From: Macrostomum lignano
Taxonomy: Eukaryota
Length of the DNA stretch: 64,000 nucleotides
Assembly (NCBI GenBank): GCA_002269645.1
Contig: NIVC01000307.1
Location: 1-64,000, forward strand
Direction of reading: 5' to 3'
In this document: one piece after another, positions 7,465 to 25,724 of the stretch
How the letters are laid out: the number at the start of each line of letters is the position of its first letter
Numbering within the stretch: the first letter of the stretch is position 1
Position numbers and translations under genes: made by a program
The notes under the pieces: generated by a model
Databases searched by the model: none
What the model was told of the DNA's origin: nothing
What the model saw: the letters and a program-made list of their open reading frames with translations, nothing else

Positions 7465-8455
7465 GATGCGGATTCAAGGATGCTGAGAAGGGGGCGGAAA
7501 GGCGGATTCAAGGATACTGAGAAGGGGCGGAGAGGCGGATTCAAGGATACTGAGAAGGGGGCGGAGAGGCGGATTCAAGGATACTGAGAAGGGGCGGAGA
7601 GGCAGATTCAAGGATACTGAGAAGGGGGCGGAGAGGCGGATTCAAGGATACTGAGAAGGGGGCGGAGAGGCGGATTCAAGGATACTGAGAAGGGGCGGAG
7701 AGGCGGATTCAAGGATACTGAGAAGGGGGCGGAGAGGCGGATTCAAGGATACTGAGAAGGGGCGGAGAGGCAGATTCAAGGATACTGAGAAGGGGGCGGA
7801 GAGGCGGATTCAAGGATGCTGAGAAGGGGGCGGAGAGGCGGATTCAAGGATACTGAGAAGGGGCGGAGAGGCGGATTCAAGGATACTGAGAAGGGGGCGG
7901 AGAGGCGGATTCAAGGATGCTGAGAAGAGGGCGGAGAGGCGGATAGGCGGATTCAATGATACTGAGAAGGGGCGGAGAGGCGGAAAGGCGGATTCAATGA
8001 TACTGAGAAGGGGCGGAGAGGCGGATTCAAGGATGCTGAGAAGGGGCGGAAAGGTGGATTCAATGATACTGAGAAGGGGGCGGAGAGGCGGATTCAATGA
8101 TACTGAGAAGGGGGCGGAGAGGCGGATTCAAGGATGCTGAGAAGGGGGCGGAGAGGCGGATTCAAGGATGCTGAGAAGGGGCGGAGAGGCGGATTCAATG
8201 ATACTGAGAAGGGGGTGGAGAGGCGGATTCAATGATACTGAGAAGGGGGCGGAGAGGCGGATTCAAGGATACTGAGAAGGGGCGGAGAGGCGGATTCAAT
8301 GATACTGAGAAGGGGGCGGAGAGGCGGATTCAAGGATGCTGAGAAGAGGGCGGAGAGGCGGATTCAAGGATACTGAGAAGGGGCGGAGAGGCGGATTCAA
8401 GGATGCTGAGAAGAGGGCGGATAGGCGGATTCAAGGATACTGAGAAGAGGGCGGG
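7465..8455. repeat. 33/34-bp minisatellite GAAGGGGCGGAGAGGCGGATTCAAGGATACTGA downstream of AKAP10
   Basis: ~30 tandem copies. Confidence 0.95.
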
Positions 8456-9687
8456 GATGCGGATTCCAGGACTACAAGAGATTTATGGCCAGTTAATGCT
8501 TGCAGGTGCGCTTTTGTATTACATAAAGTACAAAATGTTTGACAGTAAAAACTATTTTCTATCGACTTTTTCTTTCCATTTTTTTCCCTGCAATCCGTCT
8601 TCCTATCAATGTTTTGATTAATGAAGTTGTTAAATCTTTAATAAATTTGATAATCATTTCTAAATTGAAATAATGCCTCACTTGCACGCAAACTTTTTTT
8701 CGGTTTAAGTTTAATCATTTCACTTTATCGCTGTGACAAGAATTGCATGAGTTAATTATTTTCTGGCAATAAAAATTTAAATGTTCTTGGAATGTAGAGT
8801 TAGTATGAACTCGATTGGTTCATTCCCTGGCTAATTTTTTTGTGTTTCTTGCCTGAAATTATTGGCAATCGCTACATGTCGGTAGACTTTGGTGTGCATG
8901 TATTCCTACTAATAAAGCGGAGAGCTGAAAAATGAAAAAATCTCGATTAGTTCAAGAAGTGGTTTGATCTTCTCTCCCTTCTTCCTCTCCCCCTATTATC
9001 CCTTTCTCTATGTCAGTCTCTTTGCTCTTCCATTCTTTCCAATCGCTTTATGTTAAACTTGTACTTTAATTCCAGAAGTTAAATGACAATTAGCTCGTAT
9101 TTTGAATCTGTTTAAATACTTATCTAAAGTTCAATTAATCTTATCGCTTATTCAATTGGTAGATTTCGAATAATAAGTTGATCCTGTTATTTGGCGTGCC
9201 TTAATTGCATAATTTGATTTTTTGTAATAATCTAACATACAAATTTCATATGATAATACGATTATAAAGGCTATTCATAATTCATAAACCAAACGTGTAT
9301 TGTAAAACTACTATAGTGCCAGTGGACTGTCCTTGTCGTGTTAATTGTCTAGACCGGTATTTTTGCATATATTATGTATAATTAATTATAATTTACCTAA
9401 TAATAATTACTATATTAACAGATGACGCTTGTGTAGTAATTGTAAATAAATATAAAATGCTTTAAAACTGATTGATTTTGATTTTCTTGTTTCATGTTTT
9501 TTGTCTTTGCTTATATTCATTTATAGATTTTTTCCTGTAGCAGTAGTATAGTACTTTAAAAAGTTTGTTCCCTAGATGACTTTGAGCACTGCTCAAACCC
9601 TCACATCTAGCGAAGAAGGAACAAGTCATTCCCATTCCAAGGCTGTGTACACTGTGTCTTGGGGAAGGTTATATTTAGGATTCGGGT

Positions 9688-9902
9688 CGACAGTCAAATG
9701 TCACTGACAGTCAAAAGTTACTGGAAGTCAAATGTCACTGACAGTCAAAAGTCACTGACAGTCAAATGTCACTGACAGTCAAATGTCGCTGACAGTCAAA
9801 TGTCACTGGAAATCAAATGTCACTGGAAATCAAATGTCACTGACAATCAAATATCACTGACAGTCAAATGTCGCTGACAGTCAAATGTCACTGACAGTCA
9901 AT
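9688..9902. repeat. 17-bp satellite GTCAAATGTCACTGACA, copy 1
   Basis: Tandem copies; same unit as 16338-17192. Confidence 0.9.
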
Positions 9903-10248
9903 TTTCGTGAGCAATAATCGGGTACTTTAACGCGATAGGCCATTATGTTAGCTCGTATCAGAAATGTGTGATAATGTGAAAAAACCTGTGTTGTTTTGCT
10001 GTTATGCTACGGCATGGTCTGTCAGGAACACCGAACGGTTTCAACACGTTTGCTTTGCCCAGCTGGTGTGACGGACACAGATTGGCAACGCAATTTCCAC
10101 GTGTGTTTTCTGCGATTGATAAAGCTGAGAAAATGCTACTGAGAAAGAATTGCCATATACTGAGTTGTATAAAAACGTGATTTGGTATTCCTTCGACTTA
10201 TTTTATGCCTATCGAATTCGGCGAATAAACAAAGAACAGCAAGTTAAC

Positions 10249-10680
10249 ATGTCTTCAAGTGTCGCTCCTTTTGTCTGTGCGTTCTGCGCGATTCTTGCCA
10301 TAGTAAGCTGTACTTTTGCTTCGCCAAACCTGTGCGCTGAAGAATATCGTCCAGTTTGCGGGGTCGATGACAACACTTATCCGAATTCTTGCTATGCAGA
10401 ACTAGCCGGAGTTGAAATTCGTCACAATGGTCCTTGCATTTCATTGTGCTTGAATATCTATCGGCCCGTATGCGGATCGGACGGCAAAACGTATCCAAAT
10501 GATTGCTTTGCTAAGTCAGCCGGAGTTGAAATTCAACATGTTGGCGAGTGTGCCGTTGAACAGTGCCCGGACGTCTATCAGCCAGTGTGCGGTGTCGATG
10601 AAAGTACTTACTCAAATGAATGCTACGCTAGACTTGCCGGGGTTGAGGTTAAGCATGAGGGCGAGTGTCCGAAGATCTGA
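10249..10680 (+). CDS. Secreted three-domain Kazal-type serine protease inhibitor (atypical 4-Cys domains), intronless
   Basis: ATG 10249, hydrophobic signal peptide, three C-x7-C-G-x-D-x2-TY-x-N-x-C-x14-C repeats (PVCGxDxxTYxNxC). AATAAA follows at ~10695. Confidence 0.9.
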   Translation: MSSSVAPFVCAFCAILAIVSCTFASPNLCAEEYRPVCGVDDNTYPNSCYAELAGVEIRHNGPCISLCLNIYRPVCGSDGKTYPNDCFAKSAGVEIQHVGECAVEQCPDVYQPVCGVDESTYSNECYARLAGVEVKHEGECPKI

Positions 10681-10789
10681 TCAACTATTAAGGAAAATAA
10701 ACGCTTCTATAAAAAACAAAAAGTGTTTTGTGCGATTTTAATCGGAATATCCTAAAAAGTTTAACAGTTTTCTTGAGCTTCGACATCAC

Positions 10790-11415
10790 CCTGTGTGAGC
10801 GTGTGTATGAGTGCGGGAGTCAGCGAAATGGGCAGAATCGCCTCACCTATCGCTGGTTGTGGGATGATGTCACCAGTGGCCCCACAGTACAATCTCCTGT
10901 CATTGTTTTATTAGAAATCATTGATGATGATGCTTTCAAGTTTCAAATACTACTAAATGTTTTTAGTAGTCAACGGTGGCTTTCAAAAGTGCCTAATACA
11001 TGCTTTCGGATTTACAGCATTTCGACCAAAAATCTCATCATGTCATCAGGTTTTGGAAAATAATGTTTCGAAGAATTGAAACCATGGAAAAAATGGCAAA
11101 AATGCCAATAGGGCCAACATTTTTAGTAAGCTAAAAACAAAAGTTGAATTTTACTAACCTAATTTGATGCAGTTTAAAGCTAATACAATTGGATGCACGC
11201 ACTGTACTGCGTGGTCATAAGACTTTCTCCTACTTTTTTGTCTACAGGCAGGCATATTCATCGGGTTTCGGGTACCCTGGCGCAACACCTTCAGCGACAT
11301 GGTCCCGCAACCAGCACTGAGGCAATTCTTGCCCATTCCACTGACTCCCGGGCACAGACAAGCGCGCCAATACACAAGCTCACACAGCGTGTACAGCGAC
11401 TCTCTGACTTTCTAA
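10790..11415. repeat. Imperfect inverted pair of a dispersed repeat (10790-10880 vs 11295-11395)
   Basis: ctgtgtgagc..cgggagtcag..aatgggc.agaat.gcctca..gctggttg.ggga..atgtc aligns with the reverse complement of 11295-11395. An internally deleted third copy lies at 18861-18910. Confidence 0.7.
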
Positions 11416-12021
11416 TGTACAATTCTAATGTGGGGTTCTAATGTACACACCGTTGAAAACGATACCGTGACAAAAATCGCTAAAGAGTAGGGTTTTGGCA
11501 CCGAGTTCGTGGTAGGCGTTCGGGTAGGGTTTTGGCACCGAGTTCGTGGTAGGCGTTCGGGTTGGGTTTTGGCACCGGATTCGGGGTTTTCGAGTTTTTT
11601 ATATTTCGGCCGCGCACCGAATTAAACCAGTGATCGTAGCGCAGGAGTCGGACGCTATTCGGCTTTTTTGTCTTACTTGATTTGTGCAGGGTGGTCCGTA
11701 GACACAGCGGGAGGCGAGGGTCGCTCATTTCGCTAGCCCTGAAGGCCCGCAGACAGGCAGAGGCGTGCGGCCGGTCAGGGTGGTCCGTCCTGCAGCGTGA
11801 TCTTCCGTGGGGAAGACAGTGGCTGGTCTTGTCGCCCGAAGGAACTGGATGAAGTGTCTTATTGTCACTCTATACTACCTTCGATATACTCTGGGTACAA
11901 CATAAGTGGGTATTCTTTTGGGCAAATTCAATCACAGCTTTGTTTTGAAAATTTCAGCTAGCAAACTAAAACTAAAAATTAATCAAAATATTGACTTTCT
12001 AAAGATTGAATAACAAAAACA

Positions 12022-12969
12022 ATGGACGAGCATCTTGCCGCCGCTCGCGACCGAAGGCAGCGAGCTTTGGGTCAGTTGAAACGGCCGCTAAGAAATTTTG
12101 GCTCCGCTCATTTGGTCTGCGGATTGTTGCTTGGCGCCTGCGAGATCGCCATCTTTGCTAAGCTGTCTGGGCCTGAGCAGGTGATGAAGCTGTTATTTTT
12201 AGCGCATGTTCGCTTTAGTTATTTGAATGGGTTACTGGCGAGCTGCGTATTGATGTCTAAGTGACACCCAAATAGGCATACAAGTAAACATTTCAGTAAA
12301 CAGCTAATTAGACAGCTAAGAAGGCTTCTAATTAGACTTTTAAGTAGACAGCTAAGTACGAGCGCTAATCTCCATTAAATAAGCCATCAACATTGCAACA
12401 ATGAACACGCGCAGGTACCATCTCGCCAGTTGCATCAATTAGTAATATTCCTATCGCCAGTCTTCATCCTAACTGGCCTACTGTCGCTAGCGGTTTATTT
12501 TACTCCGCCAAAATCGCTGCGCCGTCTCGGCATACTCAGCGTTGTAGCCGCCGCTGCCGCTCTATGCTGTTCAATTATTGGCATCTCGGTTGTCTCTAAC
12601 AGTCTGCAAGGCCATGCCAATGTTATCAGTACTAAATCGTCTAGCGTTACGGCCAGTCAATCGCTGCAGGATTCGAATGATAATTTCTCTGTCACTATGC
12701 ACGCTATTGAAGCCGCACTGTTAGCTGTTGAGACACTGGCTAGCATTGGCCATCTGACTCTTGGCTGTCGCCAGTTCTGCTGTCGGGAACTGCACCCGAT
12801 TGGCAAGGCTGACATGGAACCGGCTGAAGACGGGGCTGAGACAGCTCTGGCGATGGGAGTCGCTCGCAGTGCCAGTCGGGACAGTCGCCTATCGCCCTAC
12901 TATGAGCAGTCTAATCAGAGTTTTCGCGACATGGCTAGGGAGATAGAAGCTGGCCCGGATCGCGTGTGA
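12022..12969 (+). CDS. CD20/MS4A-like four-pass membrane protein
   Basis: Two exons, 12022-12180 (CAG|GTGATG) and 12415-12969 (GCAG|), both phase 0. Four hydrophobic segments; TM4 is followed by CRQFCC, as in CD20-like proteins. Confidence 0.6.
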
Positions 12970-12979
12970 TTCGATTGTT

Positions 12980-13305
12980 GTCTGTCTGTCTAAGTGTCTG
13001 TCTGTCTGTCTGCCTTAGTGTCTGTCTGTCTGTCTGCCTTAGTGTCCGTCTGTCTGTCTGTCTTAGTGTCTGTATGTCTGTCTGTCTGTCTGTCTGTCTT
13101 AGTGTCTGTATGTCTGTCTGTCTGTCTGTCTTAGTGTCTGTCTTAGTGTCTGTCTGTCTTAGTGTCTGTCTGTCTTAGTGTCTGTCTGTCTTAGTGTCTG
13201 TCTGTCTTAGTGTCTGTCTGTCTGTCTGTCTGTCGGTCTTAGTGTCTGTCTTAGTGTCTGTCTGTCTGTCTGTCTTAGTGTCTGTCTGTCTTCATGTCAG
13301 TATGT
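12980..13305. repeat. (TCTG)n microsatellite with TCTTAGTG interruptions
   Basis: Starts directly after the CD20-like stop codon. Confidence 0.95.
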
Positions 13306-13614
13306 CTGCCTCTTGGAGTTAGAGTCGGCGGACTGTGTGCATCCTGGCGCACTTTGAGCAGAGTGAGAGAGATAGAGAGAAGAAACTTTTAAAAAATTAA
13401 CTATAATTTCTTAATTGCTTTCTCGTAAAAGCCAGGCTTTTTATTATTTCTGTTCTTCTCCACGCGTTTCTCTTTGTTTTGCTGGGCAGCTGGGCGTTTG
13501 TTTTTTCGTAACACTTTTTTTCGCGTTTTGTTGAGCATTGTGTCTAATTTCATTGTATTTTTGTGTCTGTCGGTTTGGTGGTATTTGGGCTGAATTTATG
13601 TGTTTGTCCCTGGC

Positions 13615-13856
13615 TGTTTCTGGCTGTCTCTTGACTGTGTCTGTTTTGTCTCTTGACTGTCTGTTTTGTCTCTTGACTGTGTCTGTTTTGTCTCTTGACT
13701 GTGTCTGTTTTGTCTCTTGACTGTGTCTGTTTTGTCTCTTGACTGTGTCTGTTTTGTCTCTTGACTGTGTCTGTTTTGTCTCTTGGCTGTGTCTGTTTTG
13801 TCTCTTGACTGTGTCTGTTTTGTCTCTTGACTGTGTCTGTTTTGTCTCTTGGCTGA
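13615..13856. repeat. 22-bp minisatellite TGTCTCTTGACTGTGTCTGTTT
   Basis: Tandem copies. Confidence 0.93.
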
Positions 13857-14621
13857 TAATGCATAATTTTCTGTAATATTTTTCATGCTTATTGCAGCTA
13901 GCGTTTATTTTATTCATTGCTGTTTTTATAGAGGCTTTTTTTTCAAAAACTTCCTAATATTGCTTTGCCCTGCTTTAGCAGTTGTTAAGCTTCAGTCTTA
14001 TAGCACTCGCATTTAATAAATATGTCTATTTATATTAATGACTTTACCGCGATAGCACTGTTAATTTTGTTGCTATTTAATCTCTTCTTTTATCGAATTT
14101 CACTAGAAGTTTATTTCAACGTTTTTTTCTGTCTTAATGTTATATAATATATTACTTAAAGTAGGTCTGGCCTATAAACGTGTTTTTTCAGCTGAGCAGT
14201 GGTCACTATTTTATTGTTTTATTACCTGCCATCTCAAAGTATTATTAGCTTGATTAGCGCGTGCCAGTATTAATTATATTTATCAGCGTTATTCACAATT
14301 TTAATTGACATTTTATGACATTTGAATTTTTCAAGTGCGTATTGTACTTTTCAAACGCTTTACACTTGCTTCTTTATCCGCAGGTTATCATGCATTATAA
14401 ATATTGTCCAACTATTATCATTTTACAGCTTATAAACATACAACTTTTTGCATTAATTCTTTTCATTTTTGGATAATTTTAAAGTTTAGAATAATCTTCA
14501 ATATCATAGATATTCATAAATTTGTCTTTTAAACATACGCTCGTAATAATTTGTCTGTTATGATAATTTAAAAACTAAAGCGTCATGCTGAGGTTTTTAG
14601 ATTTTGGTGTCTATGTGTCTG

Positions 14622-14676
14622 TCGTTCTGTCTGTCTGTCTGTCTGTCTGTCTGCCTGTCTGTCTGTCTGTCTGTCC

Positions 14677-14716
<40 letters not shown>

Positions 14717-14733
14717 GTCTGTCTGTCTGTCTA

Positions 14734-14812
<79 letters not shown>

Positions 14813-14827
14813 GTCTGTCTGTCCATC

Positions 14828-14866
<39 letters not shown>

Positions 14867-14867
14867 C

Positions 14868-14924
<57 letters not shown>
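14622..14924. repeat. (TCTG)n microsatellite
   Basis: Visible array. Confidence 0.96.
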
Positions 14925-15127
14925 GGCATATAAAAGATTTACAGCATCATCAAAACATACTTGCTTTATTTCTTCATTGCAATCTTCAAAAGTAAGGTAA
15001 TAATAGCTGGAAAATTCCTTTCTGCCTGATGCATTTTTTGAAAAAAAACTGCTTGTTATTAACGAAGTATGGTAAAACCAAAATAATTTTGTGTTAATTG
15101 ATTTTCAGTTAATCCTACTCTGCCGCA

Positions 15128-15979
15128 ATGGAACTATCGGTGCAAACAAAGACCTACTTAGTTCTTGGCATCATGGTCTGCTGTTTTGCTGTACTTTACC
15201 CGAAAATATTTCACCCCATGATCATGGCCGGTCTTGGTTTACGACAGTCGCAATCCTCTGGTAGCGGCGGCGACTGGCCTGACGGGGTCCACCCGAAACT
15301 TCGGCGCCCGATGCCGGGCGGCCCAGGCGGCGGCCCGGGTCCTCGGATGGCGGCCGAGCATGCGGCATCTGTGCAAGCCAGACAGCAGAGTGGCTTCGGC
15401 GGCAGAGGCAACGTGGTTGGCCTGATTCTGCCGGTGTACGCTATAGGCATTGTGCTGTATCTGGTGTACACCCTGGTCAAAGTGATGGGCGGCTTCAAAT
15501 CCAATAGCAATGCTACTAATAGTAGAAACTCTAGCGCTCGACGCGGCAATTCCGGCGAGGCTATTAACGATTATTATCGCAACTTTCATTTCGATCCGTT
15601 GAGCGGATAATTTGTTGATAATCATAATTCCACACGGTCGGCTAGTAGCGGCGTCAGATGCCGTCGTGATGATGATGGAGATAATGGAGATTTCGTTGAG
15701 CAGAATCGGTACGAACGGATGCACAGAGATCTGGAGAAGCTGCTCCGTCGCGTTGACGATCAGGACATCTCGGAGAATGAATTAGTGCAGTTGCGAAGCC
15801 GACTTGAGGAAACGGAGCGACAGATGACTAGCATTCTTGGCGCTATGCAGAACTTGCAGCAGAAACAGGCTGCTCAGAATGCTGATGCTGATGCTCCGGC
15901 TGATGCTGATGCTCAGCCAACCGAATCAACTGAGACGCGACAGAGAAGGCCGTACAGTCTTGATGCTACTGATAACTGA
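15128..15979 (+). CDS. RIC3: RIC-3 nicotinic acetylcholine receptor chaperone; reading frame interrupted by one in-frame TAA at 15608-15610
   Basis: CFAVLYPKIFHPM, P/G-rich linker, ILPVYAIGIVLYLVYTLVK (second hydrophobic segment), then in the same frame after the TAA the coiled coil ELVQLRSRLEETERQMTSIL. Confidence 0.85.
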
Positions 15980-16337
15980 CAATAAGTCACCGAAGTTTTA
16001 TATATTACTACTACTACTACTTTGAGTAGCTAGTAAATGTTTTGTTGAATGAAAAAGTGAGACAGCCTTTTCTAGCTCCTAAAAAAGTATTGCCATTAGA
16101 TAGTACTTAAATTCAATACAATAAGGCTGCTTTAATGGAGTTATCAGATGACGCCCAACGCAGAGCAATAGGCATTTTATACCATAAAAATTTGTACCAT
16201 GGTCACAGCACTGCCAGGAATAACAAGGGCAAAGCTCCAAGCTAGAGTTAGGCTTAAGGTTTGGGCTAGATTGGCAACTCAAATTGGCAGTTGCTGTTGC
16301 TGACAGGCAAATGCGCAGATACTATATAACAGTATAA

Positions 16338-17192
16338 ATGTCAAATGTCACTGAGAGTCAAATATCACTGGCAGTCAAATGTCACTGAGAGTCAAATATC
16401 ACTGGCAGTTAAATGTCACTAACAGTCAAATGTCACTGAGGGTCAAATGTCACTGACAGTCAAATGTCACTGAGAGTCAATTATCACTGGCAGTCAAATG
16501 TCACTGACAGTCAAATGTCACTGAGAATCAAATGTCACTGAGAATCAATTGTCACTGAGACTCAAATGTCACTGAGAGTCAAATATCACTGGCAGTCAAA
16601 TGTCACTGACAGTCAAATGTCACTGAGAATCAATTGTCACTGAGACTCAAATGTCACTGAGAGTCAAATATCACTGGCAGTCAAATGTCACTGACAGTCA
16701 AATGTCACTGAGAATCAATTGTCACTGAGAGTCAAATGTCACTGACAATCAATTGTCATTGAGAATCAATTGTCACTGAGAGTCAAATGTCACTGACAAT
16801 CAATTGTCATTGAGAATCAAATGTCACTGACAGTCGAATGTCACTGAGAGTCAAATGTCACCGACTAGTCAAATGTCACTGAGAGTCAAATATCACTGGC
16901 AGTCAAATGTCACTGACAGTCAAATGTCACTGAGAATCAATTGTCACTGAGAGTCAAATGTCACTGACAATCAATTGTCACTGACAATCAATTGTCACTG
17001 AGAATCAAATGTCACTGACAGTCAAATGTCACTGAGAGTCAAATGTCACTGACTAGTCAAATGTCACTGACAATCAATTGTCACTGAGAATCAAATGTCA
17101 CTTGCAGTCAAATGTCACCGACAGTCAAGTGTCACTGGCAGTCAAATGTGACTGACAGTCAAATGTCACTAACCGTCAAATGTCACTGACTG
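16338..17192. repeat. 17-bp satellite GTCAAATGTCACTGACA, copy 2
   Basis: ~50 tandem units; each holds the short palindrome TGTCA-C-TGACA. Confidence 0.93.
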
Positions 17193-18244
17193 ACAAATAT
17201 CATAGACCCGTATCTATGGCCATTAATCAGGCATGAAATGCTACCCTGTCGGGGCAAAAAAAGTCACCGCTTCGCACTAATATTGGATCCGATCGATTGG
17301 TCAGACGAAATTTGGTTTTAACAAACTAATGATTAAAATATGCTATCTCTACTACTAATATCAGTGATAAAATATGACGATTATCGATATATTAAAAATA
17401 CATCAGTTAATACACATGTACATCTACGCTTTATGCACTACTTGTAGTAGGTAAAAACTTTATCAATAATTTGCACCCACTTTTAAATGCTGTTAGAAAA
17501 AGTTATATATTAAACGACAGTTTTCTCTTCATAAATTTATTAAATTTTAACTTTCCCTATTAACACAAATTTATCATAACCGTGTTGCTGGATTAAGGTT
17601 TTGTTTTGCTGCACATAATTTCTTATTTCTTTTTGAGTTTCTAACTGATTTATAATCTATATAATCATCTAGATACTGCTTTTACACGCTACTCATATAA
17701 GTAGTTTACAGTTGTTCCTATCGTTAAGTTCTTACTGTCTTCAAAGTAGCTTGTATCATGTATGTTCTGCATTACATTACTATGAGTAGGAAAAAAGAAT
17801 CTGTCAATATTATGTTATTAGCTAGAATTTAGCTCTGTCTAGTCAATGATTTCATTTTTATGCATGGAAAATTTTAAACACAGCTCTTCTTCACATTGTT
17901 ATAATATGCGCTATATACTACTGACATTTTCTATATAATTCAGTTGAGTAAATAAACACTCAATTTCTTGTGTTATTATTTCTATTAATGAAAAATACAA
18001 GTCGAACATCCAAAAAAATTATTGTGTAAGTGTCTGATTGTTTGTTATTTTGCTGTGTTTTTTAACTTGCAGTCTGTTAGCTCGTGATGCAGAGTGTTTA
18101 TTAATTTTACCGATAATTTGGTACACCTTTGCAGTGGCGTTCATGCTTCTGTTCATGAACTGCAAAAAATAACTTTACTTAATTCCAAACACCAATAAAA
18201 CCGAAGCCCAAATTAGGTAGGGTTGATGTAGAAATGTTTCTTTC

Positions 18245-18697
18245 TAGTTAGGTAATTAGTTAGTCAGTCAGTTAGTCAGTTAGTCAGTCAGTTAGTTAGT
18301 CAGTCAGTTAGTCAGTTAGTCAGTTAGTTAGTCAGTCAGTCAGTCAGTCAGTTAGTTAGTCAGTCAGTTAGCTAGTCAGTTAGTTAGTTAGTTAGTCAGT
18401 TAGTTAGTCAGTCAGTCAGTCAGTTAGTTAGTCAGTCAGTTAGCTAGTCAGTTAGTTAGTTAGTTAGTTAGTCAGTTAGTTAGTTAGTTAGTCAGTTAGT
18501 TAGTTAGTTAGTCAGTCAGTTAGCTAGTCAGTTAGTTAGTTAGTCAGTCAGTCAGTCAGTCAGTTAGCTAGTCAGTTAGTTATTCAGTTAGTTAGTCAGT
18601 CAGTCAGTCAGTTAGTTAGTCAGTCAGTTAGTTAGTCAGTTAGTTTGTTAGTTAGTTAGTTAGTTAGTCAGTCAGTTAGCTAGTCAGTTAGCTAGTC

Positions 18698-18746
<49 letters not shown>

Positions 18747-18832
18747 TTTAGTTAGTTAGTTAGTCAGTTAGTTAGTCTGTCAGTTAGTCAGTCAGTCAGT
18801 CAGTTAGTCAGTCAGTTTGTTTGTTGGTTAGA
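18245..18832. repeat. (TTAG/TCAG)n microsatellite
   Basis: Visible array. Confidence 0.96.
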
Positions 18833-18993
18833 TAACTACTACAGTAGGGTTTAGATTCGTTACACCCTGACGCAACACCTTCGGCGACATCGTCCCACAG
18901 ACTTTCTAATCGTTAGGCATGTACACCCTCTGTGAAATGAAGCAAACTCAAATGAAACGAACTAACAAATCTTTAACTTCTCATTCATGCCAA

Positions 18994-20149
18994 ATGTCAA
19001 GCAGCAGCGATGGTATCAAGAAGGATCATAACCAGCTGCTTCTGCGGTGCATCGGAGAACAGCTGGCCGAGCTGGACCTCCTGCTCAGCATGTATCCGGA
19101 CGAGGCCGAACTGAAAATCGAAGATTTTGTCGCTGTCGACGAACTTCGACGATTAGTTAGCGAAGCTGACGTCGACGCGATGTCTGAGTGTCAGTTTCGG
19201 ATCGGGTTCACTTTTCGAATTATTGGAACTTCCAATCTGGTAGTTCTGGAGTGCATTTGCCGGTTGTCGGGCGCATATCCTATTGAGAAACCACCCGGAC
19301 TGTTCCTGCGATCTGATTGGCTGAGCCGCGATCGGCTCCGATTGGCTAGCGAAGCATTGGCCAATCAGCTTGAAGAGATGTTTAAACCGGGCGAACCGGT
19401 GCTTTATCAGGTATAGCTGTAATCACTTTTTCTATAGTTTTAGTTATTTTCGTTACGTATCGGTGGATTTGTGATTAATTTAGTTTTTTAAGTATCGAAT
19501 AGAATAGTATTATACGCTACATATCGGTATGTTACAGTTATTTTAGTTTTCGGTGTGTCTAAAGTTATTATTTACGCAACATATCGGTAGATATATTAAA
19601 AATTTCAAAACCACAATTCAGATGCTTAGCTGGCTAACGGAGTTCGTTTCAACCAACATTCCTACTGACGAAGATGCTTCAGCTTCCACAGCAACGGAAG
19701 CAGGAGCAGCAGAAACGGAAGCAACAACTGACCAGCGTCTCAGCCGCCTGTGGATTCACAGTCATCACATCTATAACAGCTTGAAACGGCGCGACATTCT
19801 CAACTGGAGCGCTGAATTGCGTTTAACCGGCTTCTCAATAGTTGGCAAACCCGGCATTGTCTGCGTTGAAGGACCCGAATCCGCGGTTGAAGAATTCTGG
19901 CAACGATTGCGCCGATTGAATTGGAAGAAACTCACCATGAAGGAGAAAGATGTTTGTCCGCCAGATGCTACTGAAGCTGTCCGGCGGCAGTTTAAAAAAT
20001 TTGACGACTTTCGCGAGCTGTCATTCAATGCCAGACCAGGGAGAGGCCGCGAGGTGCTGCAAGACTGGGGTCTGGTGATTCGGTTTCTAGAAGATAAAGG
20101 ACTGGGTCGCGTGATTCCGGTGTACTTTGGCAATTTGACTTCTAGGTAA
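18994..20149 (+). CDS. RWDD2B: RWD domain-containing protein 2A/2B-like (RWD + DUF1115)
   Basis: Exons 18994 (or 18919)-19410 and 19622-20149, phase 0. Motifs EQLAELDLLLSMYP, AYP..KPP, RLWIHSHHIYNSLKRRDIL, LTGFSIVGKPGIVCVEG, FWQRLRRLNWK. The 2A vs 2B paralog assignment is uncertain. Confidence 0.88.
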
Positions 20150-20164
20150 TTTGTAGCTATTTGA

Positions 20165-20840
20165 TGAAAACTGGGTCACGTGCTCTAACGGTGTACTTTT
20201 AGTCCGTCTGAACTTAATTCTTTGCTAAACAATAAAAAGTAGGCCACGTGAGCTCTCGATGTACTTTCATGCGGTCTGAACTTGATTCTTAGCTGAACAA
20301 TAAAAAGTAGGTCACGTAAGCTCTCGATGTACTTTCATGCTGTCTGAACTTGATTCTTAGCTGAACAAAAAGTAGGTCACGTGAGCTCTCGGTGTACTTT
20401 CAGGCCGTCTAAACTTTCTAAAAGATTTGATTCTGAGCTGGACAATAAAACTTGGTCACGTGACCCATTTATAATTGACTGGTGTACTTTTAGGTTGTGT
20501 GAACTTTCTTATATATTTTATTTGTAGCTAAATAATGAAAACTGGGTCACTTGATCTAAGGTGCACTTTTAATTCGTCTGAACGTTGTGACTATTCGATT
20601 CTCGGCTGGACAAAAACTAGGTCACGTGATCTGGTAGGTGTACTTTTTAGCCGTCTGAACTTTCCAAAATATTTTATTCTTGTCTGGTCAATAAAAACAA
20701 AGTCACGTGATCTCTTGGCGTACTTTTCGATAATTTTAGGCTGTTAATACTAAAAAATTCAATGTACACTCGTACTTAGGAAAATAAAACTATTTATTAT
20801 TCTCCAAGTTAAAAGTACAGTATTAGGTCACGTGATCACC
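20165..20840. repeat. Degenerate ~65-120 bp tandem repeat carrying (G)GTCACGTGA E-box motifs
   Basis: Nine units; 7 intact CACGTG. Confidence 0.8.
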
Positions 20841-21289
20841 TTAGTAGAATTTGTAGGTATTATAAAGATTACAGATACGTAAATGCATATCAGTAAATTT
20901 AAAAGTCAATGATAAGTTGATGTATTTTTTGTTTGATTTTACCAAATTTTCTGAGAAATATTTGGTGGTGCATCAATTTGCTGATTTTAATTTTAATTTC
21001 TAATATATCTTGATATATTGGTTGAGTTATTTTCTTTGTTTGCTTGCTACATGTATTTATTACAGTAGAATTTTTGTTGTTGTTGCTTTTAAAACAGTGT
21101 CAGTTAAAAAAAAACTCATTGAATCATCGCATAAGTTGGTAATCATGGTGGTTTAGGTTGTGTTGATACTATTTATAAATCCATTATTTCTTAAGTGATA
21201 TATAATCACAGATGTTAATATTTAATCTCTTAATCCTCGGATGAAATATCAATGCAGATGATAATCCTCATACCCTTAAGTCTCAGGTG

Positions 21290-21520
21290 GATTATCATGA
21301 CGGATGTTAATCCCTAATCTCTTTATCCTCAAGTGGAATATCATGACTGACGATAATTGCTAATCTCTTAATCCTCAGGTGGAATATCATTACCGATGAT
21401 AATCGTTAATCTCTTAATCCTCAATTGGAATATCATGACTGACGATAATTGCTAATCTCTTAATCCTCAGGTGGAATATCATTACCGATGATAATCGTTA
21501 ATCCCTCAATCCCAGGTGGA
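21290..21520. repeat. Degenerate ~45-bp tandem repeat (AATCTCTTAATCCTCAGGTGGAATATCAT...)
   Basis: About five copies visible. Confidence 0.75.
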
Positions 21521-21687
21521 TCATCAATAAAATCATAATCACAGATCATCAACTATTCGAATGTATTTTGCAACTCCTTAAGTTTGTCGCAAATTTCAAA
21601 AGTTTGGCATATCATCAAAATTTCTAATAACCCGCGCGGAAAACAATCATTTTCAGCCAGTGAAACATTCATTGCAAGGAAACTGAA

Positions 21688-23388
21688 ATGCGCAGACACG
21701 GGCCATCGTCTCCAACGTCTGACAGAGCGCCTAGCAGCAGTTCGAATGCTAACAACAACAGTAATCTAGCAGCCAATAGAAACCTACTAGCTGGAGAGTA
21801 CATTAGTCTGTTCAATGCCGCCTTTGGTCACGTGACCTGCGGCCTTGTATTCATACTGTGCATGAGCCAGTGCGGCATATTCGATGTTGTGCAGACAGAC
21901 ACAGATTTGAGTCGGTACGCTGAGCGGCATAGCTTAGCCTGGCTGCCAACCTGGCTGCCGATGCCGCTGAATACTGCGGTGAACTTTGGTTACAGCTTCT
22001 GCGGTATCTATTGGTTGCTTAGGGTGAAGCGGCTGTTTCTAACTGGTGAGTGAAGGCATGCACTATTGTTGATCTGTGTCCCCCAGAGTCGCAGACAATA
22101 AAGCGCCTCAAATTGACTCTTCTTTCACTTCTTTCCCATTTTACCTGTGTTACCTGGGATACAGCTTCAGGTAAAGTGGATACAGCTTCAGGTAAAGGGG
22201 GATACAGCTTCAGGTAAAGGGGGTTACAGCTTCAGGTAAAGGGGGATACAGCTTCAGGTAAAGGGGGATACAGCTTCAGGTAAAGGGGGTTACAGCTTCA
22301 GGTAAAAGAGATACAGCTTCAGGTAAAGGGGGATACAGCTTCAGATAAAAGTGTTACAGCTTCAGGTAAAGGGGGTTACAGCTTCAGGTAAAGGGTTTAC
22401 AGCTTCAGGTAAAGGGGATACAGCTTCAGGTAAAGGGGATACAGCTTCAGGTAAAGGGGTTTACAGCTTCAGGTAAAGGGGTTTACAGCTTCAGGTAAAG
22501 GGGTTTACAGCTTCAGGTAAATGGGATACAGCTTCAGGTAAAGTGGGTTACAGCTTCAGGTAAAGGGGATACAGCTTCAGGTAAAGGGGGTTACAGCTTC
22601 AGGTAAAGGGGGTTACAGCTTCAGGTAAAGGGGGTTACAGCTTCAGGTAAAGGGTTTACAGCTTCAGGTAAAGGGGATACAGCTTCAGGTAAAGGGGTTT
22701 ACAGCTTCAGGTAAAGGGGTTTACAGCTTCAGGTAAAGGGGATACAGCTTCAGGTAAAGGGGATGCAGATTAACGAAGTCCGCACGTTCCCGCATTATCC
22801 CAATCCGCAGGCAGTTTATCACGCGATGCGGCCTATTTATTCAGCGTATTCGCCGTCATGGCAACAGCCTACGGGCCGGTGCAATTAGCCCGGATTGTAC
22901 GAATGTCGCACAACCTGGCAGTTGTTGACCAATGGGTAACTCTGCCATTCTTTGCCTGGGTTCCAATCTGGGTGATCTCCACCGTAACTGGTCATTTATC
23001 AGCTGGTCCTATTTTAATTACAATGGTTGCATCGCTGCTTAGCTACCTACTAGCAGTAGTAACCGATGTTGGTTTCGAATTGGCGCTGACTTTGCACGTG
23101 TCTGCCGCGATGGGATCAGGGATTTTCCTGTGCCTTTATCCTGAGCTGTCCTCTGCGACTGGTCTGATTAAGAATGTGGCTTTGGCTGCTCTCAGCTGTG
23201 TCGGCTTTGTCGGATTAAAACTGTTGGATCACAAACTGGCTAATCTGTGCCCCGCAGTGTTTCGGATTGTGTCCGGTCATTTTCTGTCTAAACTGGCCGA
23301 TGTCATGCAGATTCACTACGTCTGTAGGGCGTTTGAATGCGTTGCCTTGATTGCGGCTGGCAATGATGACGGACGGAAGCTGGCCTGA
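21688..23388 (+). CDS. TMEM187: Transmembrane protein 187-like
   Basis: Exons 21688-22045 and 22811-23388 (phase 1). Motifs YAE..LPTWLPMPLNTAVNFGY, YGPVQ, DQWVTLPFFAW, GFELAL, LSCVGFVGLKLLDH and SGHFLSKLADVMQIH parallel human TMEM187. Confidence 0.9.
22158..22765. repeat. 20-22-bp minisatellite TACAGCTTCAGGTAAAGGGG(G/T) in the TMEM187 intron
   Basis: About 27 copies of CTTCAGGTAAA counted. Confidence 0.95.
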
Positions 23389-23459
23389 TAATCTTTTTGT
23401 TATGTTTTTGAATCTCTGTTTACAGTTTGTTGTTTCATAGTTTTGAACTGTCATGGAGG

Positions 23460-24275
23460 TGGGTAGCTACATTTAGCAGCCAGCTGATGGGTCATAGAGG
23501 GGGTTAGCTACATTTAGCAGCTAGCTTAAGGGTCATAGAGGGGGTTAGCTACATTTAGCAGCCAGCTGAAGGGTCATAGAGGGGGTAAGCTACATTTAGC
23601 AGCCAGCTGAAGGGTCATAGAGGGGGTAGCTACATTTAGCAGCCAGCTGAAGGGTCATAGAGGGGGTTGCTATATTTAGCAGCCAGCTGAAGGGTCATAG
23701 AGGGGGTAGCTACATTTAGCAGCCAGCTGAAGGGTCATAGAGGGGGTAGCTATATTTAGCAGCCAGCTGAAGGGTCATAGAGGGGGTTGCTATATTTAGC
23801 AGCCAGCTGAAGGGTCATAGAGGGGGTTAGCTACATTTAGCAGCCAGCTGAAGGGTCATAGAGGGGGTTGCTATATTTAGCAGCCAGCTGAAGGGTCATA
23901 GAGGGGGTTGCTATATTTAGCAGCCAGCTGAAGGGTCATAGAGGGGGTTGCTATATTTAGCAGCCAGCTGAAGGGTCATAGATGGGGTTGCTATATTTAG
24001 CAGCCAGCTGAAGGGTCATAGAGGGGGTTAGCTACATTTAGCAGCCAGCTGAAGGGTCATAGAGGGAGTTGCTATATTTAGCAGCCAGCTGAAGGGTCAT
24101 AGAGGGGGTTAGCTACATTTAGCAGCCAGCTGAAGGGTCATAGAGGGGGTTGCTATATTTAGCAGCCAGCTGAAGGGTCATAGAGGGGGTTGCTATATTT
24201 AGCAGCCAGTTGAAGGGTCATAGAGGGGGTTGCTATATTTAGCAGCCAGCTGAAGGGTCATAGATGGGTCATAGA
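23460..24275. repeat. 40/41-bp minisatellite AGCTACATTTAGCAGCCAGCTGAAGGGTCATAGAGGGGGT
   Basis: ~20 tandem copies. Confidence 0.95.
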
Positions 24276-24677
24276 GGCTTTTACTTCTACTTCATGATGA
24301 TTACGTTTACATCATTATTACTTGTATAAATCCTGCAATGAAGTCAAAAACTGCATATCGATTGTATTTGTAGCTTCGTTTATTTTTTAAATGTGTTATT
24401 CTTTAGTTTAGTTGAATTTGCTAGTTTATTTCCTAAAAATTTTCTTAGACTTCTCTCTGCGAATTGAATGAAACGTAGATGTGTATAGCAATTAAATAAA
24501 TGTACACTTGTTAATGTCGAGGTGTGATCTGTTTTTCATCTCTTCGATTTTGCCTAACGCTTCGAAATTGTTCTTAACAAATGAGGAAGTTACCAGTAAA
24601 TATTGATTTTTTATCAAAGTTCTAACTTGTCTGACGCAATTGGCTTGAATAGGGCGCTGAGCTTGTAAAACCATTCC

Positions 24678-25430
24678 AACTTGTTAGACACCAAACCATT
24701 CTGTTAGACACCAAACCATTCTGTTAGACACCAAACCACCCTGTTAGACACCAAACCATTCTGTTAGACACCAAACCACCCTGTTAGACACCAAACCATC
24801 TTGTTAGACACCAAACCATCCTGTTAGACACCAAACCATCCTGTTAGACACCAAACCATCTTGTTAGACACCAAACCATTCTGTTAGACACCAAACCATT
24901 CTGTTAGACACCAAACCATTCTGTTAGACACCAAACCACCCTGTTAGACACCAAACCATCTTGTTAGACACCAAACCATCCTGTTAGACACCAAACCATC
25001 CTGTTAGACACAAAACCATCCTGTTAGACACCAAACCATCCTATCAGACACCAAACCATCCTGTTAGACACCAAACCATCTTGTTAGACACCAAACCATT
25101 CTGTTAGACACCAAACCATTCTGTTAGACACCAAACCACCCTGTTAGACACCAAACCATCCTGTTAGACACCAAACCATCCTGTTAGACACCAAACCATC
25201 CTGTTAGACACCAAACCATCTTGTTAGACACCAAACCATTCTGTTAGACACCAAACCATTCTGTTAGACACCAAACCACCCTGTTAGACACCAAACCATC
25301 TTGTTAGACACCAAACCATCCTGTTAGACACCAAACCATCCTGTTAGACACAAAACCATCCTGTTAGACACAAAACCATCCTGTTAGACACCAAACCATC
25401 CTGTTAGACACAAACATCCTGTTAGACCCA
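24678..25430. repeat. 20-bp minisatellite CTGTTAGACACCAAACCATC
   Basis: Tandem copies. Confidence 0.96.
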
Positions 25431-25724
25431 GAATAAAGTCTGCTCGGCAGCAACATCCTATCCAGTTCCGATTAAGACACAAGAAAGAAAAAATCGAGTA
25501 AAAAATGTCATCAAAATAGCACTAAGTTTTATTTCGGAAACCGTTCGTGCATCTCTTGTCTCCTGTTTGTACTATTAAAAAAACGTAAAAAAATATTACT
25601 TCCACCTCCCGTCGAGCGAAGATCCAGTTTTGAATTGGGAAAAAATTATTCGCATCGTTTTTCTGTTTCTACAAAGACGGAGAGAGAAAAAGAGACAATT
25701 AAGGTCAAACGTCAAAAGTTGGCG

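What the first reader, a model, noticed from the sequence alone, without database searches (positions are those of the whole stretch)
15128..15979. RIC-3 frame split by a single in-frame TAA just before the coiled-coil domain
Seen: one continuous frame from ATG 15128 to TGA 15977-15979, broken only by GGA-TAA-TTT at 15608-15610. The 122 codons after the stop stay open and encode the RIC-3 coiled coil (ELVQLRSRLEETERQM). Known: RIC-3 is an ER chaperone for nAChRs, and isoforms lacking the coiled coil are described in other animals. Inference, four options: (1) stop-codon readthrough giving two proteoforms; (2) an atypical 48- or 51-nt intron (GTTGAG at 15598 to AG at 15645 or 15648, both frame-preserving but without a pyrimidine tract); (3) a recent nonsense allele or pseudogenised copy; (4) a base-call error. 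The context is not a classic leaky UGA-CUAG.
Basis: partly seen in the sequence, partly recalled or inferred. Interest (0 to 1): 0.7.

Follow-up and report, generated by a model that had tools for sequence, protein, structure and literature searches.

The report
Nonsense mutation in one RIC-3 copy
One of the three duplicated copies of the receptor-chaperone gene RIC-3 in the polyploid flatworm Macrostomum lignano carries a recent GAA-to-TAA stop mutation that cuts off its coiled-coil tail; this is ordinary decay of a redundant gene copy, not a recoding signal.

Summary
The frame ATG 15128 to TGA 15979 is broken only by TAA at 15608-15610. Pfam RIC3 (PF15361) spans both halves.

The window is the first 64 kb of scaffold NIVC01000307.1 of the Macrostomum lignano Mlig_3_7 assembly. 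That assembly holds three diverged subgenomes (S, L1, L2). Two syntenic copies of the gene lie on other scaffolds: PAA76112.1 (279 aa) and PAA56868.1 (290 aa, 5' partial). Both are uninterrupted and read GAA (Glu) where the window reads TAA. Other flatworm RIC-3 proteins have Lys there. So the stop is a derived G>T change specific to this copy.

The gene call on record for the window locus already ends at the TAA (165 aa). The post-stop frame is open because this copy's own branch is short, with 5 substitutions in 846 nt.

- Readthrough: no conserved stop, no leaky context, no downstream RNA structure.
- Mini-intron: the segment is coding and unspliced in both sister copies, and frame-preserving GT..AG pairs are common by chance.
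- Base-call error: cannot be excluded without reads, but the assembly was Illumina-polished and neither sister copy has a T to be mis-mapped.

Best reading: a young nonsense allele or nascent pseudogene that would give a transmembrane-only RIC-3. Interest is low.

The parts
15128..15610 (+). Truncated RIC-3 ORF: 160 codons plus TAA. It encodes TM1 (codons 10-28, 15155-15211), a Pro/Gly-rich spacer (codons 56-73, 15293-15346), TM2 (codons 96-119, 15413-15484) and 41 residues of linker.
   Evidence: Pfam RIC3, E 1.8e-18; hydropathy and coordinates. The gene call on record for this locus is P0021, 165 aa, starting 15 nt upstream at 15113 and ending at this TAA.
15608..15610 (+). Premature stop TAA, derived from GAA (Glu) by a G>T change at 15608. 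It is specific to this copy.
   Evidence: both homeologues (L001 = NIVC01000841.1, L002 = NIVC01002564.1) read GAA; the two other flatworm-like RIC-3 proteins have Lys at this column, followed by a conserved Phe.
15611..15979 (+). Post-stop remainder of the ancestral RIC-3 CDS: 122 codons plus TGA. It comprises a variable acidic linker (15611-15691), the coiled coil (15710-15868), an Ala-Asp repeat (15881-15913) and a C-terminal RQRR motif (15938-15949).
   Evidence: It differs from the inferred ancestor only by three G>A missense changes (15644, 15647, 15683) and in-frame repeat-length changes.
15598..15648 (+). A third frame-preserving AG ends at 15657. I judge this not to be an intron.
   Evidence: 3 frame-preserving GT..AG pairs here, against a median of 3 and mean of 5 around other codons of this CDS; both AGs arose from copy-specific G>A changes; the homologous segment is contiguous coding sequence in both sister copies.
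14608..14924 (.). (TGTC)n microsatellite about 200 nt upstream of the ATG, present in all three copies. It is context only and marks the edge of alignable unique sequence.
16340..17202 (.). 17-nt tandem array (about 50 copies) about 360 nt downstream of the TGA. It is context only and marks the limit of reliable three-way alignment.

Best explanation
The window is Macrostomum lignano DNA (scaffold NIVC01000307.1, bases 1-64000). This neopolyploid carries three homeologous subgenomes, and RIC-3 is present once in each, in conserved gene order. In the window's copy a single G>T substitution turned Glu-161 (GAA) into TAA.

Shown: the change is derived and private to this copy, and the other two copies are intact.

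Inferred: translation stops at the TAA. The product is a 160-residue protein with both transmembrane helices and the proline-rich spacer, but without the cytoplasmic coiled coil. The coding region is a single exon, so no exon junction lies downstream of the stop within the CDS. The mRNA may therefore escape junction-dependent decay and the truncated protein may be made.

The downstream 122 codons are still open only because very little time has passed. The whole copy-specific branch holds 5 substitutions in 846 nt. The copy is thus a young nonsense allele of a redundant homeologue, that is, a nascent pseudogene. At best it is a gene-encoded equivalent of the transmembrane-only RIC-3 isoform that mammals make by alternative splicing.
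For: Identity of the sequence: L003, fetched from NIVC01000307.1:5113-25610, equals window 5113-25610 exactly.

Family: Pfam RIC3 spans both halves. The best database hit is M. lignano PAA76112.1, at 96% identity over 100% of the query.

Three syntenic copies: the flanks align and the neighbouring genes recur (a 237-aa gene, RWD/Prp3_C, TMEM187).

Codon 161: TAA in the window, GAA in L001 and L002. Both sister ORFs are uninterrupted, at 279 and 287 codons.

Polarised changes:
- The window-specific changes are C>T 15361 (synonymous), G>T 15608 (nonsense), G>A at 15644, 15647 and 15683 (missense), and one in-frame 3-nt deletion.
- Across all three copies the pre-stop half shows 7 synonymous and 0 missense changes, so these are real evolutionary differences and not sequencing noise.

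Chance of a nonsense hit: 3.5% of all single-base changes in this CDS create a stop, so 5 neutral hits give one with probability about 0.16.

Literature:
- The DV1 genome consists of subgenomes S, L1 and L2, 1.4-2.4% diverged, all represented in Mlig_3_7 (PMC10733133).
- The assembly is Canu PacBio polished with Pilon using Illumina DNA and RNA-seq reads (PMC5730564).
- A transmembrane-only RIC-3 isoform lacking the coiled coil is conserved in mammals and changes nAChR expression (PMC4850696).
Against: No sequencing reads or transcripts could be examined, so neither the T at 15608 nor expression of this copy has been verified directly.

The substitution counts are too small to show relaxed constraint after the stop. 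There are 3 missense and 0 synonymous changes in the window branch. The intact copy L001 also has 3 missense and 0 synonymous changes in the same linker.

The coiled-coil DNA (about 190 nt) is identical in all three copies. This is compatible with continued selection or gene conversion as well as with recency.

The scaffolds are mosaics of near-identical and diverged blocks, and 36% of the assembly length is reported as chimeric. The haplotype assignment of this block is therefore uncertain.
Confidence: 0.8

Rival explanations
1. Assembly or base-call error: the real sequence of this homeologue is GAA, and the T at 15608 is a consensus or polishing artefact.
For: The assembly derives from noisy PacBio reads of a genome with three near-identical copies. 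It contains many chimeric scaffolds, and the locus shows mosaic identity to the other two scaffolds. No reads could be inspected.
Against: The assembly was polished with Illumina DNA and RNA-seq reads. PacBio consensus errors are mostly 1-nt indels (general knowledge), and this CDS has no frameshift; all its indels are multiples of 3. Neither sister copy has T at this site, so cross-mapped reads cannot have introduced it. Four other copy-specific substitutions lie within the same 850 nt, so the copy is genuinely distinct.
Confidence: 0.09
2. Nascent microintron (intronization): 48, 51 or 60 nt from GT 15598 to AG 15645, 15648 or 15657 are spliced out, removing the stop and restoring a full-length RIC-3 that lacks 16-20 linker residues.
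For: All three intervals preserve the frame. Both proximal AGs were created by copy-specific G>A changes within 40 nt of the new stop. Introns under 75 nt occur in flatworms including M. lignano, and often lack a pyrimidine tract (PMC6530080). The removed residues lie in a poorly conserved linker.
Against: The gene call for this locus is unspliced and ends at the TAA. The same segment is contiguous coding sequence in both sister copies. Frame-preserving GT..AG pairs are just as frequent around 65% of the other codons. Flatworm microintrons are reported to have near-consensus splice sites, whereas GTTGAG has T at +3 and the exon side is CC and not AG. A confirmed intron next door uses GTATAG...TTCAG in AT-rich sequence. 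A G>A change in a GG context necessarily makes AG, and the linker is just as variable in L001.
Confidence: 0.04
3. Programmed stop-codon readthrough yields two proteoforms from this copy, one transmembrane-only and one full-length.
For: The 122 post-stop codons are open and encode an intact coiled coil with all invariant residues.
Against: The stop is not conserved: both homeologues have GAA and the flatworm orthologues have Lys. UAA-U is an efficient termination context, and it matches neither UGA-CUAG nor UAG-CARYYA (sequence; general knowledge). The 100 nt downstream fold less stably than shuffles, with z = +1.4. There is no Rfam element. The open frame is fully explained by only 3 substitutions since the copies diverged.
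Confidence: 0.03
4. The truncation is functional and retained by selection (subfunctionalisation). One homeologue is dedicated to the transmembrane-only RIC-3 isoform, which modulates nAChR assembly differently from the full-length copies.
For: The truncated product keeps a Pfam-significant RIC3 domain with both TM helices. [quoted passage not shown] The pre-stop half shows no missense change in any copy.
Against: Only one synonymous change lies on the window branch before the stop, so there is no power to show constraint after the mutation. The event is very recent. Nothing distinguishes it from a neutral loss in a triplicated gene.
Confidence: 0.15

Closest known systems
RIC-3 (resistance to inhibitors of cholinesterase 3; Pfam PF15361), ER chaperone of nicotinic and 5-HT3 receptors
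   Same: It has two hydrophobic helices separated by a Pro/Gly-rich spacer, followed in the DNA by a coiled coil with the conserved L..R..LEETE.QM..IL.AM motif. The Pfam match is above the curated cut-off.
   Different: In this copy the coiled coil lies beyond a premature TAA. The coding region is a single exon, and the protein is short (283 codons against 320-410 in molluscs). No function has been tested in any flatworm.
Mammalian RIC-3 TM isoform (isoform d), made by alternative splicing and lacking the coiled coil (PMC4850696)
   Same: The predicted 160-aa product has the same architecture: TM1, spacer and TM2, with no coiled coil.
   Different: Here the truncation is hard-wired by a nonsense mutation in one gene copy and is not regulated by splicing. 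There is no evidence that it is expressed or selected.
Homeologue decay (fractionation or non-functionalisation) after whole-genome duplication, as expected in neopolyploids such as M. lignano (PMC10733133)
   Same: One of three syntenic copies carries a disabling mutation while the others stay intact. Divergence between the copies (about 1-2%) matches the published subgenome divergence.
   Different: It is at the earliest possible stage: one nonsense change, no frameshift and no further stops. It may still be a segregating allele and not a fixed loss.
Programmed stop-codon readthrough genes of animals (for example Drosophila kelch and headcase; UGA-CUAG contexts in mammals)
   Same: A long open, protein-like frame follows an in-frame stop.
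   Different: The stop is not conserved, it is UAA-U, there is no downstream structure, and the sister copies have a sense codon.

Membership tests
RIC-3 family (Pfam PF15361) | Significant match to the RIC3 profile above the curated cut-off | tested here: met
   67.8 bits for the 160-aa product and 88.2 bits for the joined frame, against a cut-off of 28.9.
RIC-3 family (Pfam PF15361) | Two transmembrane segments separated by a proline-rich spacer | tested here: met
   hydropathy peaks at residues 10-28 and 96-119. The spacer is PKLRRPMPGGPGGGPGPR at residues 56-73. Both are aligned with orthologues.
RIC-3 family (Pfam PF15361) | C-terminal cytoplasmic coiled coil in the encoded protein | tested here: not met
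   The coiled coil (codons 195-247) is present in the DNA but lies after the TAA at codon 161. It is present in the products of both homeologues.
RIC-3 family (Pfam PF15361) | Chaperone activity on nicotinic or 5-HT3 receptors | not testable with these tools
   Needs co-expression assays.
Programmed stop-codon readthrough | Stop codon conserved in paralogues and orthologues | tested here: not met
   GAA in both homeologues, and Lys in the other flatworm sequences.
Programmed stop-codon readthrough | Leaky stop context or a stimulatory downstream RNA structure | tested here: not met
   the context is GGA-UAA-UUU; minimum free energy -18.4 against a shuffle mean of -22.7, z = +1.4; no Rfam match.
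Programmed stop-codon readthrough | Purifying selection on the post-stop frame after the stop arose | tested here: inconclusive
   only 3 copy-specific changes, all missense and all in a linker that is equally variable in an intact copy.
Spliceosomal (micro)intron | GT...AG boundaries with near-consensus splice sites | tested here: inconclusive
   GT and AG are present, but no more often than around other codons. The donor GTTGAG has T at +3. Flatworm microintrons are said to have near-consensus sites.
Spliceosomal (micro)intron | Segment absent from mature mRNA or from annotated CDS | tested here: not met
   the gene calls of all three copies are contiguous across the segment, and the window's ends at the TAA. 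Direct RNA-seq was not available.
Processed (retro)pseudogene | Loss of flanking synteny, poly(A) tract and target-site duplications | tested here: not met
   the flanks are colinear with both other copies for more than 15 kb. There is no poly(A) after the 3' end. The intact copies are also single-exon.
Duplicated (non-processed) pseudogene or nonsense allele | Disabling mutation in one copy with intact syntenic paralogue(s) | tested here: met
Duplicated (non-processed) pseudogene or nonsense allele | Neutral evolution or loss of expression of the disabled copy | tested here: inconclusive
   Too few substitutions. Expression is not testable here.

The most novel reading that the evidence does not exclude
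The new stop and the two new AG dinucleotides 36-40 nt downstream all arose in this one copy. They might together represent intronization caught in the act: a premature stop bypassed by a nascent 48/51-nt microintron in a flatworm lineage that uses microintrons. A more modest version is that this homeologue has been converted into a dedicated gene for the coiled-coil-less RIC-3 isoform. The probability and interest given here are for the intronization reading.
Probability: 0.04. Interest if true: 0.7.

Novelty: new member of a known kind. Interest (0 to 1): 0.15.

Why it matters
The finding matters little on its own. It is a clean example of the first step of homeologue loss in a very young animal polyploid, and the public gene call for the locus already ends at this TAA (165-aa product).

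It has two practical uses:
- Anyone doing RIC-3 or nAChR work, RNAi or knock-outs in M. lignano should know that there are three copies, one of them truncated.
- The copy-specific variants around 15608-15683 are convenient markers for phasing the three subgenomes at this locus.

If the truncated copy proved to be expressed and active, it would be a gene-level parallel to the spliced TM-only isoform of mammals.

Tried and rejected
- Exact look-up of the 160-aa product found nothing. The record holds a 165-aa form that starts 15 nt upstream.
- The protein database holds only three M. lignano RIC-3 sequences, all from the one assembly. There were no transcript-derived or other-assembly copies, so the TAA could not be cross-checked.
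- The first blastn of the loci was swamped by microsatellite hits. It was replaced by filtered megablast and segment-wise MAFFT.
- I tried to date the stop by comparing post-stop divergence with the flanks. The flank rate in the window branch is too uneven (0.5% on the 5' side, about 3% on the 3' side) and the counts too small, so I dropped the argument.
- Retrocopy was rejected because synteny is conserved.
- A-to-I editing of UAA to a sense codon would need two edits to reach UGG, and no structure is present. It was rejected by inference.
- An alternative genetic code, with TAA as a sense codon as in some flatworm mitochondria, was rejected. This is a nuclear locus, and the gene call on record treats the TAA as the stop.
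- Literature searches for the locus tags and for RIC-3 in flatworms returned nothing specific.
- The one supplementary file held as text for PMC10733133 is a short PDF (about 11,000 characters). I did not open it, so none of the three scaffolds was assigned to S, L1 or L2.

Full report
**Observation**

The sequence is as described. One frame runs from ATG 15128 to TGA 15977-15979, 284 codons in all, with a single internal stop: TAA at 15608-15610 in the context GGA-TAA-TTT.

The 160 codons before the stop match Pfam RIC3 (PF15361) at E 1.8e-18. The 122 codons after it match the end of the same profile (positions 115-145). The joined frame matches profile positions 1-145 of 146 at E 9.7e-25.

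Hydropathy places two transmembrane helices at residues 10-28 and 96-119. The coiled coil is at residues 195-247, which is 15710-15868.

**Where the window comes from**

The best database hit is a Macrostomum lignano protein, PAA76112.1 (BOX15_Mlig010549g1, 279 aa), at 96% identity over the full query. Its 90% cluster holds two more proteins from the same assembly, GCA_002269645.1 (Mlig_3_7):
- PAA56868.1 (290 aa, 5' partial);
- a 165-aa product that ends ...DPLSG, exactly at the window's TAA.

The 165-aa product is encoded on NIVC01000307.1 at 15113-15610. The 20.5 kb fetched around it is identical to window 5113-25610. So the window is bases 1-64000 of that scaffold, and the gene call on record for the locus already ends at the TAA.

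**Three syntenic copies**

The other two genes lie on NIVC01000841.1 (locus L001) and NIVC01002564.1 (locus L002). Around all three, the same neighbours recur: a 237-aa gene upstream, and RWD/Prp3_C and TMEM187 downstream. The flanks align over more than 15 kb.

This fits the published genome structure. The sequenced DV1 line carries three homeologous subgenomes: S on the small chromosomes, and L1 and L2 on the two versions of the large chromosome. They are 1.4-2.4% diverged and all are represented in Mlig_3_7 (PMC10733133). The assembly has about 180 Mb of duplicated non-repetitive blocks (PMC5730564).

**The stop is derived and private**

In a codon alignment of the three copies, codon 161 is TAA in the window and GAA (Glu) in both others. 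Both sister ORFs are uninterrupted, at 279 and 287 codons. In a 14-protein alignment, the two other flatworm-like RIC-3 sequences have Lys in that column, followed by a conserved Phe.

Polarising by the two-against-one rule gives these changes:

| Branch | Changes |
|---|---|
| Window | C>T 15361 (synonymous); G>T 15608 (nonsense); G>A at 15644, 15647 and 15683 (missense, all after the stop); one in-frame 3-nt deletion in a Gly run; repeat-length change in the Ala-Asp repeat |
| L001 | six synonymous changes before the stop position; three missense changes in the linker just after it |
| L002 | one missense change |

Across all branches, the half of the gene before the stop shows 7 synonymous and 0 missense changes. 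That is the signature of real evolution under purifying selection, not of sequencing noise.

**Why the downstream frame is still open**

The window branch holds only five substitutions in 846 aligned coding bases. Three neutral hits in 366 nt would rarely create another stop, because only 3.5% of all possible single-base changes in this CDS are nonsense. So the open 122 codons carry no information about selection for readthrough.

By the same figure, a lineage with five hits has roughly a 16% chance of acquiring a stop. One broken copy among three is therefore unremarkable.

The data cannot show relaxed constraint after the stop. The window has 3 missense and 0 synonymous changes there. The intact L001 copy shows the same 3:0 pattern in the same poorly conserved linker. 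The coiled-coil DNA is identical in all three copies.

I tried to date the stop against flank divergence and dropped the attempt. In the window branch the flank rate ranges from 0.5% on the 5' side to about 3% on the 3' side.

**Readthrough**

- The stop is not conserved.
- The context UAA-U matches neither known leaky motif (sequence, plus general knowledge of UGA-CUAG and UAG-CARYYA).
- The 100 nt downstream fold less stably than shuffled controls, with z = +1.4 and 189 of 200 shuffles folding at least as well.
- Rfam finds nothing in 14900-16400.

I put this reading at about 3%.

**Mini-intron**

Three points favour it.
- The 48-, 51- and 60-nt GT..AG intervals all preserve the frame.
- Flatworms, M. 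lignano included, have microintrons under 75 nt that often lack a pyrimidine tract (PMC6530080).
- Both proximal AGs were created by the copy-specific G>A changes at 15644 and 15647. I had not expected this.

More points count against it.
- The homologous segment is contiguous, in-frame coding sequence in both sister gene calls, and the window's own gene call is unspliced and stops at the TAA.
- Frame-preserving GT..AG pairs are just as common around other codons of this gene: median 3, mean 5, and 65% of codons have at least 3.
- Microintrons are reported to have near-consensus splice sites, whereas GTTGAG has T at +3 after a CC exon end.
- The confirmed intron in the neighbouring RWD gene uses GTATAG...TTCAG in AT-rich sequence.
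- A G>A change in a GG run necessarily yields AG, and the linker is just as mutable in L001.

I keep this as the most novel reading that the evidence does not exclude, at about 4%.

**Base-call error**

This cannot be excluded without reads. Several points make it unlikely.
- The assembly was Pilon-polished with Illumina DNA and RNA-seq reads.
- The CDS has no frameshift.
- Neither sister copy carries a T that mis-mapped reads could have donated.
- The T sits among four other copy-specific substitutions.

One caveat applies. The scaffolds are mosaics:
- The window is nearly identical to L001 at 7.5-11.5 kb and 19-24 kb.
- It is nearly identical to L002 at 10.5-14 kb.
- All three are distinct across the RIC-3 block, 14-18 kb.

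Also, 36% of the assembly length is reported as chimeric. I put the error reading at about 9%.

**Mechanism**

Shown: a derived nonsense mutation in one of three syntenic RIC-3 homeologues.

Inferred: translation ends at codon 160, giving a protein with TM1, spacer and TM2 but no coiled coil. The CDS is one exon, so the stop has no downstream exon junction within the coding region. The message may therefore be stable and the truncated protein may be made.

In mammals a spliced isoform with this same architecture exists. It behaves differently from full-length RIC-3 on alpha7 and alpha4beta2 receptors, and the coiled coil is needed for the positive effect on alpha7 (PMC4850696). The truncated copy could thus be weakly active or even modulatory. 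With two intact copies present, simple neutral loss is the default reading.

**Verdict**

Options 1 and 2 are disfavoured. Option 4 is unlikely but untested.
- This is an ordinary, very young homeologue-disabling mutation in a neopolyploid, and the public gene call for the locus already ends at the TAA.
- Interest is low.

Noticed in passing
window 7500-26000 versus L001 (NIVC01000841.1) and L002 (NIVC01002564.1): The three homeologous scaffolds are mosaics. Window versus L001 shows 0-2 mismatches per 500 bp at 7.5-11.5 kb and 19-24 kb, but 8-10 per 500 bp at 11.5-18 kb. Window versus L002 shows 0-2 per 500 bp at 10.5-14 kb and 10-60 per 500 bp in most other intervals. The cause is either homoeologous exchange or gene conversion between subgenomes, or haplotype switching in the assembly.
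   Followed up: partly
They lie 36-40 nt downstream of the copy-specific nonsense change.
   Followed up: partly
window 16020-16130: In the first ~110 nt after the TGA, the presumed 3' UTR, the window carries about 10 substitutions and 4 small indels against L001 and L002, which are nearly identical to each other there. This is far more diverged than the adjacent CDS.
   Followed up: no
window 12979-13307, 13625-13855, 14608-14924, 16340-17202, 18245-18831: Dense tandem arrays bracket the RIC-3 gene: (TGTC)n and variants, a 22-nt unit with 10.6 copies, a 17-nt unit (GTCAAATGTCACTGACA) with 50.6 copies, and (TAGT)n with 147 copies. Copy numbers differ between the homeologues.
   Followed up: no
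window 15881-15913: The GCTGAT (Ala-Asp) repeat near the RIC-3 C-terminus varies in length among the three copies, always in frame: 5 codons fewer in L001 and 3 codons more in L002.
   Followed up: no
window 10150-10680 (+): A single-exon ORF of 176 aa with a hydrophobic N-terminus and three Kazal-type protease-inhibitor domains (Pfam Kazal_2, E 1.1e-20).
   Followed up: no
window 19003-21663 and from 21688 (+): Downstream neighbours are an RWD plus Prp3_C domain gene and a TMEM187 homologue. The RWD gene has a roughly 210-nt AT-rich intron, GTATAG...TTCAG, at about 19412-19621. The RWD gene is not called in L001 although the DNA there is virtually identical to the window, so its absence is an annotation artefact and not a gene loss.
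   Followed up: partly
window 15102-15127: TTTTCAG ends at 15108, 19 nt upstream of the ATG. It looks like a splice or spliced-leader acceptor, and an in-frame TAA lies at 15110-15112. The annotated 5'-partial CDS starts at 15113.
   Followed up: no
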